Assembly: GCF_032444005.1 (NCBI RefSeq)
Contig: NC_091283.1
Span: 445,904,001 to 445,968,000 of the forward strand
Direction of reading: 5' to 3'
DNA length: 64,000 nt
Origin: Ranitomeya imitator
Lineage: Eukaryota
The position numbers and the translations under genes are program-made. A model generated the notes under the pieces. That model was not told the origin of the DNA. It saw only the letters and a program-made list of their open reading frames with translations, and did not search any database. This document shows positions 3,050 to 64,000 of this stretch, piece after piece (position 1 is the stretch's first letter; every line of letters starts with the position of its first letter).

Positions 3050-4810
3050 GTGTAAAAACAAAAATGTAACCATAAATTTTGTTATGCAATTTCTCCTGAA
3101 TACGCCAATACCCCATATGTGGGGGTAAACCACTGTTTGGGTGCACCGCAGAGCTTGGAAGTGAAGGAGCGCCGTTTTACTTTTTCAATGTAGAATTGGC
3201 TGGAATTGAGATTGGACGCCATGTCGTGTTTGGAGAGCCCCTGATGTGCCTAAACAGTGGAAACCCCCCACAAGTGACACCATTTTGGAAACTAGACCCC
3301 TTAAGGAACTTATCTAGATGTGTGGTGAGCACTTTGAACCCCCATGTGCTTCACAGAAGTTTATAACGTAGAGCCGTGAAAATAAAAAAAATCGCATTTT
3401 TTCTACAAATATGATCTTTTTGCCCACAAATTTTTATTTTCACAAGGGTAACAGGAGAAATTAGACCACTAAAGTTGTTGTGCAATTTCTCCTGAGTACG
3501 TTGATACCCCATATGTGGGGGTAAACCACTGTTTACGCACCGCAGAGCTTGGAAGAGAAAGAGTGCCGTTTTACTTTTTCAATGTAGAATTGGCTGGAAT
3601 TAAGATCGGACGCCATGTCGCGTTTGGAGAGCCCCTGATGTGCCTAAACAGTAGAAATCCCCCACAAGTGACCCCATTTTGGAAACTAGACCCCCCATTG
3701 AACTTATCTAGATGTGTGGTGAGAACTTTGAATGCCCAAGTGCTTCACAGATGTTTATAATGCAGAGTCGTGAAAATAAAAAAAAAAAAATTTTTTACAC
3801 AAAAAAGATATTTTAGCCCCCAAGTTTTTATTTTCACAAGGGTAACAAGAAAAATTGGACCCCAAAAGTTGTTGTCCAATTTGTCCTGAGTATGCTGGTA
3901 CCCCATATGTGGGGGTAAACCAATGTTTAGGCGCACGGCAGAGCTCGGAAGGAGCGCCGTTTTGGAATGCAGACTTTGATAGAATGGTCTGTGGGCATTA
4001 TGTTGCGATTGCAGAGCCCCTGATGTACCTAAACAGTAGTAACCCCCCACAAGTGACCCCATTTTGGAAACTAGACCCCCCAAGGAACTTATCTAGATGT
4101 GTGGTGAGAACTTTGAATGCCCAAGTGCTTCACAGAAGTTTAGAATGCAGAGTCGTGAAAATAAAAAATATTTTTTTTTTCACAAAAAAGATATTGTAGC
4201 CCCCAAGTTTTTATTTTCACAAAGGTAACAGGAGAAATTGGACTGCAATAGTTGTTGTCCAATTTATCCCGAGTATGCTGATGCGCCATATGTGGGGGTA
4301 AACCACTATTTGGGCGCACGGCAGAGCTCGGAAGGGAAGGAGCGCCGTTTTGGAATGCAGACTTTGATAGAATGGTCTGTGGGCGTTATGTTGCGTTTGC
4401 AGAGCCCCTGATGTACCTAAACAGTAGTAACCCCCCACAAGTGACCCCATTTTGGAAACTAGACCCCCCAAGGAACTTATCTAGATGTGTGGTGAGAACT
4501 TTGAATGCCCAAGTGCTTCACAGAAGTTTAGAATGCAGAGTCGTGAAAATAAAAAATATTTTTTTTTTTCACAAAAAAGATATTGTAGCCCCCAAGTTTT
4601 TATTTTCACAAAGGTAACAGGAGAAATTGGACTGCAATAGTTGTTGTCCAATTTATCCCGAGTATGCTGATGTGCCATATGTGGGGGTAAACCACTATTT
4701 GGGCGCACGGCAGAGCTCGGAAGGGAAGGAGCACCATTTTACTTTTTGAGCGCAAAATTGGCTGTCGTGTTTGGAGACCCCCTGATGTACCTAAACAGTG
4801 GAAACCCCCC
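3050..4810. repeat. ~390-bp internal tandem repeat, ~4.5-5 units
   Basis: The motif CAATTT..CC.GA.TA.G...ATACCCCATATGTGGGGGTAAACC recurs near 3087, 3483, 3877, 4260 and 4649. Confidence 0.9.
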
Positions 4811-9222: not shown

Positions 9223-9717
9223 GGCCGGGGTCACACACAATGTATAAAAAAATCTGTCCGATTTTGTCTGCTGAGAATCGCACAAATGTTCTCCGTATGG
9301 TGATCCGTATCTCATCTTTGTAGAATGCCAGGATGCGTTTTTTTCTCAAAAAAGTATCCGTGTGTCATCTGTATGTCATCCGTATGGTGAGATTTTCTCA
9401 CACACTTGCAAAATGAGTAAATAATGGCTGAGCATTTCCTGTCACCTGCCCAATGCCTGAGAATTTCTCGTAAGTGACACATGTGGTCCATGTGTAATCC
9501 GTATTTTTCTCGCCCCATAGACTTGCATTGGCGTTTCTCAGCTGAGATACGCGGACAATCCCAGCATGCTGTGATTTCACTAGCAAGTGTAATACGGACG
9601 AGAAAAAAACGGATGATGGGAGCGGCCCCATAGATTCACTTTGGTCCGAGGGCTATGCGATTTTTTTTTTTTCTCGCTTAACACTCATCCGTATTACGCT
9701 GTAGTGTGACCCCGGCC
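9223..9717. mobile_element. PIF/Harbinger-like MITE
   Basis: TIRs GGCCGGGGTCACAC / GTGTGACCCCGGCC, flanks TTA / ATA. Confidence 0.8.
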
Positions 9718-18888: not shown

Positions 18889-19176
18889 GGCTATGTGCAC
18901 ACGTCAGGATTTCTTGCAGAAATTTCCTGAACAAAACCGGACATTTTCTGCAAGAAATCCGCATGCGTTTTTTCACGTTTTTTGCGCGTTTCATGCGTTT
19001 GTTTTTTTCCGGAGCTTCCCAATGCATTAAATAGCTCTGGCGCCGGCACTCCGGAGTGGAGCGTGCAGCTCCATGTATTGCTGTGCGGCTGCACGCTCCG
19101 CTCCGGAGTGCCGGCGCCAGAGGAGGGATTTCACCTGCGAGACTCGGCCGTATCTCGCGTATGTGTGATCCCGGCC
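18889..19176. mobile_element. Fused halves of two Harbinger-like MITEs at the DIRS copy 2 truncation
   Basis: Left end GGCTATGTGCACACG; the right part equals the 36732-36927 family and ends GTGTGATCCCGGCC|TAA. Confidence 0.65.
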
Positions 19177-19537
19177 TAACTTCCTAACAAAAAAAAAAGT
19201 TACGTTTCAAAAATTGTGCTGATGTAAAGTTCATATTTGGGAATTATTTATGAACTATTTTGTGTGATATAAAGCTGTGTTTTAAGGGCATAAAAATTAA
19301 GACTTTAAAAATTGCTACATTTTCTAAATTTTTGTTTTTAATCACAAATAAACGCAAGTTATATCGAAGAAATTTTACCACTATCAAAGTATATGTCACA
19401 AAAAAAGATATCTCAGAATCAGTGGGCTCCGTTGAAGAGTTATTACTCCATAAAGTGACAGTTGTAAAATTTGGCCTGGTCATGAACGTGCACAGCCTTG
19501 GGGAATGAAGGGATTAAGCGAACCATCATTTTTAACT

Positions 19538-32380: not shown

Positions 32381-33680
32381 AATGTATGTACACAGACTCC
32401 ACCAGCAGAATAGTGAGTGCAGCTCTGGAGTATAATACAGGATGTAACTCAGGATCAGTACAGGATAAGTAATGTAATGTATGTACACAGTGACTCCACC
32501 AGCAGAATAGTGAGTGCAGCTCTGCAGTATAATACAGGATGTAACTCAGGATCAGTACAGGATAAGTAATGTAATGTATGTACAGTGACTCCACCAGCAG
32601 AATAGTGAGTGCAGCTCTGCAGTATAATACAGGATGTAACTCAGGATAAGTAACGTAATGTATGTACACAGTGACTCATCCAGCAGAATAGTGAGTGCAG
32701 CTCTGGGGTATAATACAGGATGTAACTCAGGATAAGTAACGTAATGTATGTACACAGTGACTCATCCAGCAGAATAGTGAGTGCAGCTCTGGGGTATAAT
32801 GCAGGATGTAACTCAGGATAAGTAACGTAATGTATGTACACAGTGACTGCACCAGCAGAATAGTGAGTGCAGCTCTGGAGTATGATACAGTATGTAACTC
32901 AGGATCAGTACAGGATAAGTAATGTAATGTATGTACACAGTGACTCCTCCAGCAGAATAGTGAGTGCAGCTCTGCAGTATAATACAGGATGTAACTCAGG
33001 ATAAGTAACGTAATGTATGTACACAGTGACTGCACCAGCAGAATAGGGAGTGCAGCTCTGGAGTATAATACAGGATGTAACTCAGGATCAGTACATGATA
33101 AGTAATGTAATGTATGTACACAGTGACTCCACCAGCAGAATAGTGAGTGCAGCTCTGGAGTATAATACAGGATGCAACTCAGGATCAGTACAGGATAAGT
33201 AATGTAATGTATGTACACAGTGACTCCTCCAGCAGAATAGTGAGTGCAGCTCTGGGGTATAATACAGGATGTAACTCAGGATTAGTATAGGATAAGTAAT
33301 GTAATGTATGTACACAGTGACTCCACCAGCAGAATAGTGAGTGCAGCTCTGGAGTATAATACAGGATGCAACTCAGGATCAGTACAGGATAAGTAATGTA
33401 ATGTATGTACACAGTGACTCCTCCAGCAGAATAGTGAGTGCAGCTCTGGGGTATAATACAGGATGTAACTCAGGATTAGTATAGGATAAGTAATGTAATG
33501 TATGTACACAGTGACTGCACCAGCAGAATAGTGAGTGCAGCTCTGGAGTATAATATAGGATGTAACTCAGGATCAGTACAGGATAAGTAATGTAATGTAT
33601 GTACACAGTGACTCCACCAGCAGATTAGTGAGTGCAGCTCTGGAGTATAATACAGGATAAGTAGTGTTATGTATGTACAC
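32381..33680. repeat. 97-bp (with 86-bp variants) satellite, ~14 copies
   Basis: CAGCAGAATAGTGAGTGCAGCTCTGGAGTATAATACAGGATGTAACTCAGG... units; ORF-track offsets of 97 and 86 nt. Confidence 0.95.
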
Positions 33681-33829: not shown

Positions 33830-34838
33830 CTATATGGTGGCCCGATTCTAACGCATCGGGTATTCTAGAATATGTATGTATATAGCAGCCACATAGTATA
33901 TAGCACAGGCCACAACATATTCTTGAATACCCTATGTGTTAATACAGGCCACACAATATATAACTGTGGCCACGCAGTATATAACACAGCCCAAACAGTA
34001 TATAACACAGCCCACATAGTATAACACTGACCACGTAGTATATAACGCAGCCCACGCAGTATATAACATTACCCACATAGTGTATAACACTGCCCACGAA
34101 GTATATAGCAGCCATGTAGTATATAACGCAGCCCACGCAGTATGTAACACAGCCCACATAGTATATAGCAATGTGGGCACTATATGCGTGGTTAAAAAAA
34201 AGACTTAAAATAAAAAATAAACATATACTCACCGTCTGAAGGCCCCTTGTAGTCCTGGCGCCTGTGTGCGGTGCACGCGGCAGCTTCTGGTCCCAGGATT
34301 GGTATGAGCGCAGGACCTGTGAAGACATCACGGTCACATGACCATGACATCATGGAAGGTCCTTCTCGCATAGCATCCTTGGCACCGGAACCTGCCGCTT
34401 GCACTGCCGAGGACAGCGCGCACGTTGGAGGGTGAGAATAACCTTTTTTTTTTTTTTTTTAATTATTATTATTTGTAACATTAGTTTTTTTTACTATTGA
34501 TGCTGCATACGTAGCATCAATAGAAAAAATTTGGTCACACAGGGTTAATAAGCTGCGTTAATGGAGTGCATTACACCATGGCATAACGCGGTCCATTAAC
34601 GCTGCCATTAACCCTGTGTGAGGGCTGACTGGAGGGGAGTATGGAGCGGGCACTGACTGCGGGGAGGAAGGAGCGGCCATTTTGCCGCCGGACTCTGCCC
34701 GTCGCTGATTGGTCGTGGCAATGGTCGTGGGCGTTTTGCCACGACCAGTCAGCGACTTGGAATTCCATGACAGACATAGGCCGCGACCAATGAATATACA
34801 GACAGACGGAAGTGACCCTTACACAATTATATAGTAGA
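33830..34838 (-). mobile_element. Non-autonomous Helitron
   Basis: On the minus strand: A|TCTACTATATAATTG at the 5' end; 3' hairpin CCCGAT-GCGTTAGA-ATCGGG then CCACCATATAG|T (CTAG in the 56620 copy); no TSD; internal ~22-bp repeats. Confidence 0.75.
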
Positions 34839-35084
34839 TCAGAGCATCTGATATACGACTACTAAAAGTCTAATAAATGTAAATTTGCATTATGGTGACT
34901 CGCTTCCCATCTTAGGTTACATGGTGTCTCGCTGCCCAGCCTTGGAGCAGTCTCATCAGGCAGGAAATACTTTACCTTTCATGCTCCTGCTTGCAATAAT
35001 GGCCTTTTGGGAGTTGAGAAAACAAAGCTGTACAGCGCATGATGTACTCAGTGCTGGACGGACCTTTGATCAGCGCTCACAATG

Positions 35085-35977
35085 ATTCTGCAAAGACGAC
35101 GCCCAGTGATTGGACTGTGACAGCACTGCTACAATCCTCATCTGCTGATCACAGGACCAACTCCTTGTCAGGGCTCTTAAAAGGCCACATATCCAAGCCC
35201 TTTCCACTTCCTGCCGACTTCAACTCAAAAATATTTCACGAATCCGTTCATTCCTCAACCAAGAATCTGCAAAAACCCTAGTCCATGCCCTCATCATCTC
35301 TCGCCTTGACTGCTGCAACCTCCTGCTCTGTGGCCTCCCCTCTAACACCCTCGCACCCCTCCAATCTATTCTAAACTCTGCTGCCCGACTAATCCACCTG
35401 TCCCCCCGCTATTCCCCGGCCTCTCCCCTCTGTCAATCCTTTCACTGGCTCCCCATTGCCCAGAGACTCCAGTACAAAAGCCTAACCATGACATACAAAG
35501 CCATCCACAACCTGTCTCCTCCATACATCTGTGACCTCGTCTCCCGGTACTTACCTACACGCAACCTCCGATCCTCACAAGATCTCCTTCTCTACTCCCC
35601 TCTTATCTCCTCTTCCCACAATCGTATACAAGATTTCTCTCGCGTATCACCCCTACCCCAACATATCAGACTCTCGCCTACCATCGAAACCTTCAAAAAG
35701 AACCTGAAGACCTACCTCTTCCGACAAGCCTATAACATGCAGTAACCACCGATCGACCAAACCGCTGCATGACCAGCTCTACCCTCGCCTACTGTATCTT
35801 CACCCATCCCTTGTAGATTGTGAGCCCTCGTCGGCAGGGTCCTCTCTCCTCCTGTACCAGTTATGACTTGTATTTTTTAAGATTATTGTACTTGTTTTTA
35901 TTATGTATACCCCCTCCTCACATGTAAAGCGCCATGGAATAAATGGCGCTATAACAATAAATAATAATAATAATAAT
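35085..35977 (+). mobile_element. L2/CR1-clade LINE 3' fragment with (AAT)n tail
   Basis: VHALIISRLDCCN..LC, LHWLPI, YKAIHNLSPPYI; L2-type 3' end AGATTGTGAGCCC...TGTAAAGCGC...(AAT)n. Confidence 0.85.
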
Positions 35978-35998
35978 ACTGCAAACAATATGAGGAAC

Positions 35999-36145
35999 CA
36001 TGAGCACAGAAAGCTCAGAGTCCGACTAATAGATTGGGGCCTGGCAGAGTTCCATCATCCTGGGCAGGAATATAATGTGAGAGTCGCCTCCAGATACTTC
36101 AAGGGTCCCGAGCTGCTCGTTGATTATCAGGTATAACAGCCTAGA
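35999..36145 (+). pseudogene. CSNK2A1: Processed fragment of casein kinase II alpha mRNA
   Basis: HEHRKLR(VR)[35 protein letters not shown], followed by a decayed ...YSLD-like segment. Confidence 0.85.
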
Positions 36146-37200
36146 ACAACTCAAAGTCCCACCTGTATGCAGACGACACTCAGATCTACCTCTCTGGCCC
36201 AGATGTCACCTCTCTGCTGTCCAGAATCCCGGAGTGTCTGTCAGCCATATCCTCCTTCTTCACCTCTCACTTCCTAAAACTCAATGTAGACAAAACCGAA
36301 CTCATCATCTTTCCCCATCTCGCGTATCCCCCCTACCTGATCTATCTATTATGGTAAACGGCATCACGCTCTCTCCTGCACCTGAAATCCGCTGCCTCGG
36401 GGTAACTCTCGACTCTGCCCTGTCCTTCAAACCGCACATCTAAACTCTTGCCACCTCCTGTCGCCTCCAACTCAAAAATATTGACAGAATCCGTCCTTTA
36501 CTCAGCCTACAATCAACTAAAACTCTTGTGCATGCCCTCATCATCTCCCGCATCGATTACTGCAACACCCTCCTCTGTGGCCTCCGCGTTAACTCTCTTG
36601 CATGGCTCCAGTCTGTCGTCAAGTCTGCTGCCCGACTAATCCACCTCTCTCCTCACTACTCCCCTGCATCTCCCCTCTGCAAATCCCTCCACTGGCTCCA
36701 AATTCCCCAACGAATCCAGTTCAAACTCTAAGGCCGGGATCACATATGCGAGACACACGTCTGTGTCTCGCATGTGAAATCCAAGCTCTGGCGCCGGAAC
36801 TTCAGAGCGGAGCGTGCGGCTCCATGTGTTGCTATGCAGCCGCATGCTCCGCTCTGGAGTGCCGGCGCCAGAGCTTGGATTTCACATGCGAGACACGGAC
36901 GTGTTTCTCGCATGTGTGATCCCGGCCTAACACTGATCTACAAAGCCATCCACAACCTGTCCCCTCCCTATATCTCTGCACTAATCTCCCAATATCTTCC
37001 CTCACGTAATCTTCGATCCTCCCAAGACCTCCTACTCTCCTCCACACTTATTCATTCCCCACACAACCGCCTCCAAGATTTCTCCTGAATATCCCCCATC
37101 CTCTGGAATTCAACGCATCCGATTATCCACCACCCTCGGATCCTTCAGATGGAACCTGAAAACCCATCTCTTCAGGAGAATCTACAGCCAACAATAACGA
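36146..37200 (+). mobile_element. L2-clade LINE fragment (RT C-terminal part), interrupted by a MITE
   Basis: HLYADDTQIYLS, LKLNVDKTE, RCLGVTLDSALSFKPHI, HALIISRIDYCN. Confidence 0.9.
36732..36927. mobile_element. Palindromic Harbinger-like MITE
   Basis: TAA|GGCCGGGATCACA ... TGTGATCCCGGCC|TAA; removing it restores L2 QFKL|TLIYKAIHN. Confidence 0.9.
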
Positions 37201-37242
37201 TTCCGCCGACTCACCACCACCGGAGATGCCGCGTCACCAACC

Positions 37243-37410
37243 GCCGAAGCTACCACCTCACCAACTGCCCGAGCCGCCGCCTCACCAACTGCCCGAGCTG
37301 CCGCCTCACCAACTGCCCGAGCCGCCGCCTCACCAACTGCCCGAGCCGCCGCCTCACCAACTGCCCTAGCCACCGCCTCACCAACTGCCCAAGCCGCCGC
37401 CTCACCACCA
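37243..37410. repeat. 24-bp GC-rich minisatellite, ~7 copies
   Basis: GCCGCCGCCTCACCAACTGCCCGA units. Confidence 0.9.
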
Positions 37411-39336
37411 CCAGAGGTGCCGCACCCCCGACCTCCTGTCTCTTCCCCATTATCCCATGGAATGTAAGTCTTGCCATTACATGGCACTTTGATTCTCTCC
37501 ACGGCCTTATGGCTACCCTACCATCTTTCTGTGTTTAGGCACATCAGACATGGCTACCATTCATCGACTGTTTAGCTTCCCTTTAAAGTGAAATACACGT
37601 TATATCCGTTCATATACTACCCATATTGAATCCAACTTGTATATTTTGACCTCATTGGATGTGTTTATATGTTTACATATTTCATACTTGTTGACACATC
37701 TCCTAATAGGTATTTTCTATCCTTATATCCACAGTCCATTGTTTTTGTTCCACTAACTGTCTCACATTTTACATTGTATGGTGTTCACTCCTTTGGAGCA
37801 ATACTATGTCACCTGTGTGAGTGCAGGCACTTTTTGTGTTCTTAATGCCGCCTTCTACCCTTCTTTGTCCAAATAAACTTAATGTTTTACCCTTCATACT
37901 TATTGTCCTTCCATCTGCCCTTCCCTGTCTAGAAATTAGACTTGTGACCCCCGAGTGCGGCATAAAAACAGGTGATCGGTTTCCTGCGGGTCAAAGTCAG
38001 CGCAAATCCACATTATAATGAGAAAATCGATTGATCACAGCAGCTTCAAACATGGCATGGCTAGACATCAATTTTTTCTCGGTTTTCTTGAGCAACGGTG
38101 TCCAAAGTAAGGATGGCAAAGATGGATGATTAATCAGATTAGATTCATTTGCCACTTAAACGACGCACAGTTCCGATTTTCATTAAAATAACAAAAAAAA
38201 TTTGCCAATATCAAGGCAAAGGCGGCAGCAGTGCTGGCAATAAGGTGCGCAGGTGGCCTGGAAAGGAGGCACTGCATTTCTTCAGTGATGGGGAGTGGGG
38301 TTCTGTCTGAATCTCCCTAAGGCCTCTGTCACAGTTTTCACACGCACCGGAGACACTGACACAAGTAGACACATTGAAATCTATGTTGCTGTGCACATGT
38401 CAGTGTGTTTCCATGGACCATGTGACCCATACGTAGACATGACTGTTTTTTACCGGCAGCATGGGCCACAAAACGAGGAGCACACTGGGATGTTATCCAT
38501 GTGACACACACAGGTGCCTGAGCAGCAGCGGTACAGCAAGCGCTGTTCCCCGGCGCCGGGTGCTGAAGACGACTCATCATTCTCCCCTGCTCTGCCGGCG
38601 ATCAACGTGAGCAGAGGAGAATGATGAGAGTTATATTTAAGTGATAACAATGAGAGTAGGCGGTGGCTGATAGGATTATTACTCCAATAAGCCTACCCCT
38701 GCTGCCACTAATAACAGTGACAGCAGGAGACGCTGATGGGAGTATTCAGCACCCGCCGCCTGTGCTATAAATTAATGAGGTGTCCGTGCGTATTGTACTG
38801 ATGCAGTACATGGTTGCCACAAGTATTACACACACGGACATTGACACTTCTGGTACCGGGAAAAAAATGGACGTGTGAGACTGGCCTACAACAGGGATTC
38901 AGATGAACCGCCGATAGGACCATAGAATACAACGTCAAAGAAAGGGGGGATTTCGTTTGTGTTTTATCTATGAACGTGGCCGTTTGGGCAGATGGGCACA
39001 GAGACGTGGCTTACTGCCCTTTCTGTACCCATTTGAAGAAACGCACACAGAAAACAAAAATAGAAGAAGTTCAAGAAATCTGTCCGCTCGGTTCATTTTT
39101 TTCCCTCTCTTGTCCCATCGGTGGTTTAAACCCCCATCCCCCCAAAACACAAAACATTCAGTCTGCCCCCCGGATGCAGTGTGATCAGCATGTATAGCAG
39201 TCATATCTATACCCTATGGCACTTCAGCTTTCGGGGGGCAGATGATGACACATCCCAACGTGTACGCAGCAAGCCATGCACAGCGGGACGAGATGGGGGC
39301 TGATGAATCAAGAGCGACATTAGTCGGCAGGAGTAA

Positions 39337-62957: not shown

Positions 62958-64000
62958 ACCCGGTGAGACCGTTTCTTATCTTACCTCATATGATACCCGG
63001 AGAGAACACTTGGTGCCATCTTGGCGCCTTTTTATTTTTTTCTCGTATTTCAAGGCCTCGCAGTTACTTTTGTCAGGTTTTTTGTTAAGCTAACTTCTTC
63101 CATTTGTCTGACAACAGTGCATCATACCTCAGGATCAGAGACTGCGCCATTCCACGCCTCGGTGGAAACCAGAACGATCCCACCCCTATAAAATGTGAAG
63201 ATGGTGGCGGGTCAGAGGGCAGGATGGAAGAAGATGGTGGACGGCATTCATCAAGCATAAGACTTGCATTTACCAGTAAGATTGTTACGATCGCCACCCC
63301 TTCACCCAGCCACCTAGTCGGAATGGTCATCTGAACCAAGAACCTGTACCAGTGCCAAGTCTCATCTACCTCTTTCAGATCTGTGCCCGTATAAAGACAA
63401 TTCCTCGCCGAGGAGACCAGTCGGAGTCATTTCCAGTGGGTTTGTTTACTACTCTTGGTGGCATTGCCCGCTCGTATTACCTCACTACGCCGTTTACAGT
63501 GTGAATCGTGAAATAAGCTACTCCGCAGAGCTTTGCTGCCCCCCAGTGGGCACCTTTAGGTGGTGCTCTAGTGGCGCCCAGAGCAATTCTCTTCCCAGTT
63601 TAGTTTGTTACTTTAGACATCGGCCAGTCGTAGCAGCAAGTCTGGCTTCAGTCCTGCCATCCCTCCCTGCCTGAAGTTATTGAGGCAGGCTGGTTGCTAG
63701 GGACATTTTAGAGTGCTTGTTAGGCAACGTCCATAGCAACCAGACTGTTGGCCATGTCTGCATGGTATTGTCATCATTCCTGGAGTGCCTTCAGGGCAGG
63801 TAAGCCCGGTGACTACTTGGCAGTGGGGTGCAAGACATTTACACAGTATTGTCCTAGGATTTAAATGGGGGGGGGCAGAGTGCTCCAGTCCTACATAGTT
63901 TCTATTCACGGACAGCAAGCAGTCATCTTGAAAATGTCAAACAGTTAACTTTATTTATTAGACGCTGATTACGATCCATAGGATGAAACATTTAAATAAC

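What the first reader, a model, noticed from the sequence alone, without database searches (positions are those of the whole stretch)
35999..37200. Chimeric retro-insertion: spliced CSNK2A1 mRNA fragment fused 5' of an L2 LINE fragment
The ~150-bp segment encodes the CK2-alpha activation segment. HEHRK and HPGQ indicate A1 rather than A2. From memory of the human gene, it crosses the K170|L171 junction without an intron and appears to continue into decayed MYDYSLD (GTATAACAGCCTAGA), so it derives from mRNA. It joins directly, on the same strand, to L2 RT sequence (HLYADDTQ), and sits just after another L2's (AAT)n tail. This is the layout of a template-switch chimera, which is well known for L1 but rarely documented for L2. 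It suggests L2 machinery can copy cellular mRNA in this lineage. Two extra codons and F-Y-H to F-H-H show decay.
Basis: partly seen in the sequence, partly recalled or inferred. Interest (0 to 1): 0.7.

Follow-up and report, generated by a model that had tools for sequence, protein, structure and literature searches.

The report
CSNK2A1 gene scrap fused to L2
A dead, single-copy 152-base scrap of a poison frog's own casein-kinase-2 alpha gene sits joined to the cut-off front end of an L2 jumping gene; it was most likely picked up from a half-spliced gene transcript while that L2 inserted, which is a known kind of accident, rarely documented for L2.

Summary
The CK2-alpha (CSNK2A1) fragment is real and lies between the (AAT)n tail of one L2 and the 5'-truncated reverse-transcriptase region of a second L2, all on the + strand.

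I compared it exon by exon with real CSNK2A1 genes of Lithobates and four dendrobatoid-cluster frogs. It consists of:
- the last 25 nt of the "HEHRK" exon (35989-36013);
- a 7-nt spacer (36014-36020);
- the whole 111-nt LRLIDWG...VDYQ exon (36020-36130);
- the first 10 nt of the following intron (36131-36140, 9/10 identical).

The 87-nt intron between the two exons is missing. The source was probably a partly spliced pre-mRNA, not mature mRNA.

Contig depth shows the CK2 piece is low-copy while both L2s are 10^4-10^5 times deeper, so the chimera was not amplified. I found no target-site duplication, no other CK2 piece in the window and no second copy.

Best reading (about 0.5): one event in which L2 reverse transcriptase switched from L2 RNA to nuclear CSNK2A1 pre-mRNA. 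Independent insertions or capture of genomic DNA are not excluded. It has no function. It is a new member of a known kind, of modest interest.

This scan did not report this CK2-L2 junction before on other DNA. One unchecked note (s1-280689) describes a DNAJB9 retrocopy inside an L2 in the same genome.

The parts
35185..35978 (+). L2 copy #1: 5'-truncated 3' part with ORF2 end, 3' UTR and (AAT)n tail (about 35957-35978)
   Evidence: 77% identical to L2#2 over 35185-35478 and 35480-35721. Contig depth is 10^5-10^6 against about 10 for the unique flank, and loose ends of other copies lie at 35185.
35979..35988 (+). 10 nt not assigned (CTGCAAACAA) between the L2#1 tail and the CK2 piece
   Evidence: No match to exon A of frog CSNK2A1 beyond 35989.
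35989..36013 (+). Last 25 nt of CSNK2A1 exon A (...MIDHEHRK); 22/25 identical, with the last 17 of 17 identical
   Evidence: blastn against L036-L039; alignment.
36014..36020 (+). Spacer CTCAGAG standing where the 87-nt intron and the first C of exon B should be. Its first 5 nt equal the last 5 nt of the real intron (..TCTTCTCAG|C). It could also be a mutated duplicate of the exon start CTCCGA.
   Evidence: the origin is not resolved.
36020..36130 (+). Complete CSNK2A1 exon B (L171-Q207, 111 nt) with L171V and Y182H
   Evidence: The CSNK2A1-like contigs of runs X1, X3 and X8 differ at 36053 and 36073 within the listed part 36021-36092 (X8 also at 36070). The CSNK2A2-like contigs differ at 11 listed places.
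36131..36140 (+). First 10 nt of the intron that follows exon B (GTATAACAGC against GTATAACTGC)
   Evidence: Ungapped continuation of the alignment to L037-L039. About 3e-5 by chance for 9 of 10.
36141..36146 (+). Junction zone CTAGAA. From 36142 it overlaps the weak L2 match, so the exact breakpoint is undetermined.
36147..37468 (+). L2 copy #2: 5'-truncated inside the RT domain (LGQLIKSH..HLYADDTQ region) with a 17-nt net deletion at about 36154. It runs to the ORF2 end (about 37197) and part of the 3' UTR. No tail was identified.
   Evidence: Loose-end consensus TGGGACAACTCATAAAGTCCCATGGCTTCC before 36155 in all four runs, and depth 10^5 from 36165. RVT_1 E 9e-5. 3' UTR homology to L2#1 reaches 37468.
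36732..36927 (.). Palindromic MITE inserted into L2#2, with a TAA duplication (a later event, not part of the chimera)
   Evidence: other L2 copies read through the site (table 5c).

Best explanation
This is a non-functional relic of one retrotransposition accident.

Proposed sequence of events (all steps inferred):
1. An L2 element was being reverse-transcribed into the chromosome.
2. The reverse transcriptase had copied the L2 RNA from its 3' end up to the middle of the RT-coding region.
3. It then left that template and continued on a nearby nuclear CSNK2A1 transcript. Ligation or end-joining of the two nucleic acids at the 5' junction would give the same product.
4. That transcript had already lost its short 87-nt intron but still carried the much longer next one (about 1 kb in L039).
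5. Copying resumed 10 nt inside the retained intron, ran back through the whole LRLIDWG...VDYQ exon and 25 nt of the preceding exon, and then stopped.

The result is [CK2 piece]-[5'-truncated L2], both in sense orientation.

Shown directly: the composition and boundaries of the piece, its parent gene, its low copy number, and the direct junction with L2.

Inferred: that the two parts arrived together, and that an RNA template was used.
For: - Composition: exon A end + exon B + 10 nt of intron, 116/120 identical to the real gene, with the 87-nt intron absent.
- Real frog genes have both introns. The missing stretch begins exactly at the 5' splice site and ends within 0-7 nt of the 3' splice site. 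That is what splicing gives, and a random DNA deletion would give it only about 1 time in 10^3.
- The CK2 piece and L2#2 are on the same strand, with the CK2 piece on the 5' side of a 5'-truncated L2 and at most 6 unassigned bases between them.
- No other CK2 exon or pseudogene piece exists in the 64 kb, so L2#2 did not simply split a longer retrocopy whose remainder survives.
- Ages are compatible. The CK2 piece differs from its parent at 4/120. L2#2 differs from nearly all other copies at no fewer than 11 of 575 listed places.
- The L2 family is very abundant, with many copies 99% or more alike, so it was recently active.
- Chimeras of this layout are documented for L1 and for a fungal LINE (PMC2104539; 10.1101/2025.02.02.635956).
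Against: - No target-site duplication was found. The 3' tail of L2#2 cannot be identified.
- It is a single copy with no second, independent example. No empty orthologous site was seen.
- The exon A-exon B joint is not clean. Seven bases (CTCAGAG) stand in place of one, and five of them equal the end of the intron. Removal of the intron by ordinary splicing therefore needs an extra event.
- The exact L2 boundary rests on a 10/12 match plus an inferred 17-nt deletion (the 8-mer alone reaches p about 0.08).
- Another L2 tail lies only 10 nt from the other end of the piece. In this TE-dense genome close neighbours can arise independently.
- The junctions were not confirmed by independent reads. 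No listed contig bridges them.
Confidence: 0.5

Rival explanations
1. Independent events. A short CSNK2A1-derived fragment, RNA- or DNA-derived, was already at this site. L2#2 and L2#1 later inserted beside or into it, and the rest of any longer copy was lost by deletion.
For: - The region is saturated with nested repeats: two L2s, a MITE and tandem repeats within 3 kb.
- L2#1 sits as close to the piece as L2#2 does and appears younger (7 near-fixed private differences in 800 nt against 11 or more in 575 nt). This shows that close neighbours do arise here.
Against: - A normal retrocopy would carry the mRNA 3' end and poly(A). No other CK2 sequence is detectable in the 64 kb.
- It requires tight adjacency (6 nt or less) and the same orientation by chance, plus an extra deletion.
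- The piece keeps intron sequence, which is atypical for a processed pseudogene.
Confidence: 0.25
2. DNA-level capture. About 230 bp of genomic CSNK2A1 DNA (exon A end, intron, exon B, intron start) was patched in as filler during double-strand-break repair or 5'-end joining of the L2 cDNA. An 82-86-nt deletion later removed the small intron.
For: - Both ends of exon B carry intron-derived bases: CTCAG upstream and GTATAACAGC downstream. This is what genomic DNA would give.
- The exon-exon joint is not the precise mRNA joint.
Against: The deletion would have to start exactly at the first base of the intron and end within a few bases of its last. That is about 10^-3 by chance, whereas splicing explains it directly.
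Confidence: 0.12
3. Tripartite chimera from two template jumps: L2#2 RNA, then CSNK2A1 pre-mRNA, then the 3' tail of a second L2 RNA (L2#1). All three were laid down in one insertion.
For: - All three parts are in the same orientation.
- The L2#1 tail ends only 10 nt from the CK2 piece.
- Double jumps are documented for a fungal LINE (PMC2104539).
- According to the abstract of PMC4176376, stringent-type LINE proteins recognise their own 3' tail RNA. That would favour a jump onto an L2 tail.
Against: - L2#1 and L2#2 belong to different subfamilies (77% identity).
- L2#1 looks about half as diverged from its relatives as L2#2 (lower bounds only).
- 10 bases at the joint are unexplained.
Confidence: 0.1
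4. Assembly artefact joining unrelated reads at repeats.
For: No listed Logan contig bridges the junctions.
Against: - The piece differs from the real gene (Y182H, the 7-nt spacer, missing intron), so it is not a misplaced read of the gene.
- Depth in 35970-36034, where neither real gene fits, is non-zero in the two runs X1 and X3 whose contigs also lie on the unique flank upstream.
Confidence: 0.03

Closest known systems
L1 chimeric retrocopies (U6/L1, 5S/L1, mRNA/L1), ascribed to template switching or RNA ligation during target-primed reverse transcription
   Same: - Two unrelated transcripts are fused directly, both in sense orientation.
- The cellular RNA part lies 5' of a 5'-truncated LINE (10.1101/2025.02.02.635956).
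   Different: - The LINE here is an L2-type element, not L1.
- The cellular part is an internal 152-nt piece of a partly spliced pre-mRNA, not a full small RNA or the first exons of a gene.
- TSDs and the LINE tail, which are hallmarks in the L1 cases, could not be shown.
Bi- and tripartite chimeric retro-pseudogenes of Magnaporthe grisea (LINE template jumps; PMC2104539)
   Same: They show that non-L1 LINE reverse transcriptases make such chimeras, including double jumps.
   Different: Those chimeras are in a fungus, involve a recurrent partner RNA, and occur in many copies. Here there is a single copy.
Ordinary processed pseudogene (retrocopy) of CSNK2A1
   Same: It derives from the CSNK2A1 transcript, and one intron is missing.
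   Different: There is no mRNA 3' end and no poly(A). Only 1.2 exons are present, and the start of the next intron is retained.
Origin of tRNA-derived SINEs with LINE 3' tails by RT template switching (textbook hypothesis; from my own knowledge)
   Same: A stringent-type LINE RT continues on a cellular RNA after copying a LINE 3' part.
   Different: SINE founders are transcribed and amplify. This piece did not.

Membership tests
LINE template-switch chimeric retrocopy | Two parts from different transcripts fused directly in the same orientation, with the cellular part 5' of the LINE part | tested here: met
   CK2 piece 35989-36140 and L2#2 from 36142-36147 onward, both on the + strand, with 6 or fewer unassigned bases between them.
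LINE template-switch chimeric retrocopy | The LINE part is 5'-truncated and ends with the family's 3' tail | tested here: inconclusive
   L2#2 is 5'-truncated inside the RT domain. Its 3' UTR homology stops at 37468 and no tail was found.
LINE template-switch chimeric retrocopy | One target-site duplication flanks the whole chimera | tested here: inconclusive
   Only a meaningless 7-mer is shared between the two junction zones. The 5' side is occupied by L2#1 and the 3' end is unknown.
LINE template-switch chimeric retrocopy | The cellular part is RNA-derived | tested here: inconclusive
   The 87-nt intron is absent, with its left edge exactly at the 5' splice site. However, 5 nt of that intron's end may remain, and 10 nt of the next intron are present. 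The best fit is a partly spliced pre-mRNA.
LINE template-switch chimeric retrocopy | Both parts are absent together at the orthologous site of relatives that lack the insertion | not testable with these tools
   Only short Logan contigs were available. Run X3 (a second organism) covers the upstream flank (record 17 differs at 7 letters and 5 gap letters over 351 nt, about 3%) and seems to hold a CK2-like copy with a 2-nt deletion, but no bridging contig is listed.
Processed pseudogene of CSNK2A1 | All introns removed, mRNA 3' end with poly(A), and its own TSD | tested here: not met
   The start of an intron is retained at 36131-36140. There is no further CK2 sequence and no poly(A).
Functional CSNK2A1 or CSNK2A2 exon | Lies within a gene that has the other exons, with intact splice sites and conserved residues | tested here: not met
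   It is the only CK2 hit in the 64 kb. There is no acceptor, it carries Y182H and an insertion, and the real gene is elsewhere (L039).
L2-clade LINE (for the two flanking elements) | RT domain with the YADDTQ box, high copy number, and a 3' UTR ending in a short tandem repeat | tested here: met
   RVT_1 E 9e-5, below the Pfam cut-off because the piece is only 64 aa. The relatives found all carry the ..HxFADDTQLY box; their clade was not determined. Depth is 10^5-10^6. L2#1 has an (AAT)n tail. Assignment to L2 rather than CR1 rests on C-terminal motifs recalled from memory and was not tested against a repeat library.

The most novel reading that the evidence does not exclude
L2 reverse transcriptase in poison frogs may recurrently jump onto nascent, partly spliced host pre-mRNAs during insertion. 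If so, 5'-truncated L2 copies would scatter exon-sized gene fragments through these giant genomes. This locus would be one instance, possibly a double jump that also laid down L2#1. The unchecked DNAJB9-in-L2 note in the same genome (s1-280689) would be another.
Probability: 0.25. Interest if true: 0.55.

Novelty: new member of a known kind. Interest (0 to 1): 0.3.

Why it matters
L2-type LINEs are "stringent": their protein recognises its own 3' tail (abstract of PMC4176376). They are therefore not expected to make ordinary retrocopies of host mRNAs. A review makes the same argument for CR1 (PMC5470649).

A host-gene piece fused to the 5' end of an L2 would show a way round that restriction, because switching templates in mid-synthesis needs no tail recognition. 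The retained intron start points to nuclear pre-mRNA as the template.

As a single decayed copy, this locus is an anecdote. It would matter only if a genome-wide screen showed an excess of sense-oriented host fragments at L2 5' ends.

Tried and rejected
- **Real exon of a CK2 gene in this window:** rejected. tblastn with full-length CK2-alpha finds only this piece.
- **Amplified chimera or repeat-borne exon:** rejected. Depth is about 10-16 over the piece against 10^5-10^6 over the L2s. No near-identical ORF turned up among 5.8 billion proteins or in the gene-position index.
- **Continuation into exon C (MYDYSLD):** this first looked plausible against Lithobates (11/13, 2 of 2000 shuffles). 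It was rejected once the dendrobatoid genes showed that these bases are the intron start.
- **My own idea that AGCCTAGAA is wholly L2 (Y-T-S-S-L-G codons, partly from memory):** not needed for 36131-36140. It stays possible only from 36142 on.
- **Remnants of exon A upstream of L2#1, or of exon C downstream of L2#2:** not significant. A weak co-linear protein hit at 63077-63252 is chance (21 of 300 shuffles in 600 nt).
- **TSD search:** nothing.
- **Getting the L2 consensus further upstream:** failed.
  - There is no other RT-region copy in the window.
  - No copy matching L2#2 exists in the five frog CSNK2A1 loci.
  - None was found in metagenomes; one search gave only 35-50% relatives.
  - The protein word search found 2 candidates.
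- **Intron positions:** loci L001-L006 (unknown animals, 70-76% DNA identity) lack the K170|L171 intron. This briefly suggested that the junction might not exist in frogs; the frog genes settled it.

Housekeeping:
Exons were compared one by one, by reference.
- The window holds no N.

Full report
**What is in the sequence**

Window 35987-36133 (+) reads [49 protein letters not shown] and then a stop.
- Against all solved structures it matches CK2-alpha residues 163-208 (E 2e-23, 87 hits). CK2-alpha' scores lower at 5e-21. Pfam gives Pkinase at E 4e-5.
- Immediately upstream, 35185-35978 is the 3' part of an L2-type LINE ending in (AAT)n.
- Downstream, from about 36147 to 37468, is a second L2. 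It starts in the middle of the RT domain (HLYADDTQ; RVT_1 E 9e-5) and is interrupted by a palindromic MITE.
- All three parts are on the + strand.
- A full-length CK2-alpha query finds nothing else in the 64 kb. So this is neither the gene itself nor a large pseudogene broken into detectable pieces.

**Which genome**

Earlier notes of this scan call the genome a poison frog. That fits the results here. The closest real genes I could fetch come from a protein cluster whose named members include Anomaloglossus baeobatrachus and Ranitomeya imitator.

**The parent gene and its introns**

Read-through ORFs from many vertebrates first suggested introns at K170|L171 and after Q207. Some unidentified animals lack the first of these (L001-L006), so I fetched real genes:
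- the moray eel Gymnothorax javanicus (L007);
- Lithobates pipiens (L008);
- four dendrobatoid-cluster loci (L036-L039).

All have both introns. In L039:
- exon A ends ...GACCATGAGCACAGAAAG|GTAAGT;
- an 87-nt intron ends ...TCTTCTCAG|;
- exon B runs CTCCGACTAATAG...GATTATCAG|;
- the next intron begins GTATAACTGCTGC and is about 1 kb long;
- exon C begins ATGTACGACTACAGTCTAGAC.

I compared exons one by one and built no joined model.

**Anatomy of the fragment**

| Window | Content | Match to the real gene |
|---|---|---|
| 35989-36013 | last 25 nt of exon A | 22/25; the last 17 are all identical |
| 36014-36020 | spacer CTCAGAG | stands where the intron and the first C of exon B should be |
| 36021-36140 | exon B plus 10 nt beyond it | 116/120, ungapped, to L039 9209-9328 |

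- The stretch 36021-36140 covers the rest of exon B (to 36130) and then GTATAACAGC, the first 10 nt of the following intron (9/10; about 3e-5 by chance).
Exon C of these frogs fits only 10/13, and only after a 5-nt gap.
- I had first found the exon C reading plausible against Lithobates. The closer genes overturned it.
- The two "extra codons" lie exactly at the exon-exon joint.
- The first five bases of the spacer equal the last five of the intron. The spacer could equally be a mutated duplicate of the exon start CTCCGA. I could not decide between these.

**Copy number and relatives**

I laid Logan contigs of four runs on 34800-36730 at 80% likeness: X1 (organism A, the best holder and probably the window's species), two further organisms X3 and X8, and X17, a probable RNA run of organism A.

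*Depth.* Depth is 10^5-10^6 over both L2s. It is only 10-16 (X1) over 35970-36099, the same order as the unique upstream flank (10.2). The chimera was not amplified. No near-identical ORF exists in the protein collections either.

*Real-gene contigs over exon B.* Two kinds appear.
- One kind has 11 listed differences, including G>C at 36063 (Gly to Ala). HPAQ is the motif of the protein I take to be CK2-alpha' (P0126; the assignment is from my own knowledge).
- The other kind differs only at 36053 (restoring Tyr182) and 36073. These are the same differences seen against L038 and L039, so it is the real CSNK2A1.
- The RNA contig stops fitting exactly at 36130, the exon end. The genomic CSNK2A2-like contig runs 3 nt further.

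*L2 consensus.* Other L2 copies lose the window before 36155 and continue upstream with TGGGACAACTCATAAAGTCCCATGGCTTCC (LGQLIKSHGF).
- Window 36142-36153 (TAGAACAACTCA) matches the start of that consensus at 10/12.
- A 17-nt net deletion then separates it from the solid L2 match.
- The CK2-to-L2 joint therefore lies within 36141-36146.

*Possible ortholog.* Run X3 covers the upstream flank, differing at 7 letters and 5 gap letters over 351 nt (about 3%). It also holds a CK2-like contig with a 2-nt deletion at 36079. This hints that the fragment has an ortholog there, but no bridging contig is listed.

**How it most likely arose**

The missing stretch starts exactly at the 5' splice site and ends within 0-7 nt of the 3' splice site. 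Splicing explains this; a random DNA deletion would do so about once in a thousand. The next intron is still represented by its first 10 nt.
- The simplest template is a nuclear CSNK2A1 pre-mRNA from which the short 87-nt intron had been removed but the longer next intron (about 1 kb in L039) had not.
- The piece is joined, in sense orientation and with at most six unassigned bases, to the 5'-truncated end of an L2.
- This is the layout produced when a LINE reverse transcriptase leaves its own RNA during target-primed reverse transcription and continues on another RNA. It is described for L1 (10.1101/2025.02.02.635956) and for a fungal LINE (PMC2104539).
- The rough ages agree. The CK2 piece differs from its parent at 4/120. 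L2#2 has at least 11 private differences in 575 nt.

I put about 0.5 on this single-event reading.

**What keeps it from being proven**
- There is no target-site duplication and no identifiable L2#2 tail.
- There is only a single copy, and no empty site was seen.
- The exon-exon joint is untidy.
- The L2 boundary rests on a short match.
- The region is so full of nested repeats that L2#1, which looks younger, also ended up only 10 nt from the piece.

Rivals:
- independent insertions next to a pre-existing fragment (0.25);
- capture of genomic DNA followed by an intron-sized deletion (0.12);
- a double jump that also laid down L2#1 (0.10);
- misassembly (0.03).

**Function and novelty**

The piece has no function.
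- It holds 45 residues of the kinase without the catalytic loop.
- It carries Y182H and an insertion.
- The 77-codon ORF (35903-36136) starts in an L2 3' UTR and is open by accident.
- No RNA contig specific to the fragment was seen. Contigs cannot show absence.

This is a new member of a known kind. It matters only as a pointer. L2-type LINEs recognise their own 3' tail (PMC4176376) and so are not expected to retrocopy host mRNAs, yet a mid-synthesis switch of template would bypass that restriction. One unchecked note in the same genome (a DNAJB9 retrocopy inside an L2 RT, s1-280689) suggests a genome-wide, orientation-aware screen would be worthwhile.

Noticed in passing
window 36732-36927 (second copy 19033-19180): A palindromic MITE (arms about 89% complementary) is inserted in L2#2 with a TAA target duplication (36729-31 and 36928-30). 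Other L2 copies read straight through the site. The 3-bp TAA duplication suggests a PIF/Harbinger-type element (from memory).
   Followed up: partly
window 37203-37436: A 24-nt tandem repeat (6.3 copies, 95% alike, CTCACCAACTGCCCGAGCCGCCGC) has expanded inside the 3' UTR of L2#2.
   Followed up: no
window 33000-33658 and 33940-34167: A 97-nt satellite of 6.8 copies (94% alike) and a degenerate 21/42-nt repeat lie just upstream of the studied region.
   Followed up: no
window 36154 (L2#2): A 17-nt net deletion lies in the L2 RT-coding sequence 8-20 nt from the chimeric joint, between two AGTCCCA repeats of the consensus. This damage near the junction may date from the joining event.
   Followed up: partly
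L001-L006 (Logan/NCBI contigs of unknown animals): In these loci the CK2-alpha exon runs uninterrupted from ALDYCHSMG to VDYQ, with no intron at K170|L171. All vertebrate genes I examined (eel and five frogs) have that intron.
   Followed up: partly
L039 about 9430-9480, L038 about 4540-4592: The real CSNK2A1 intron after exon B carries, about 100 nt downstream of the exon, the antisense 3' end of an L2/SINE-like repeat (…TATAGCGCCATTAAT…). It is in the wrong orientation to be the source of L2#2.
   Followed up: no
run X3 (a second organism), window place 36079: A CK2-like contig with a 2-nt deletion may be the orthologous copy of this fragment decaying independently.
   Followed up: no
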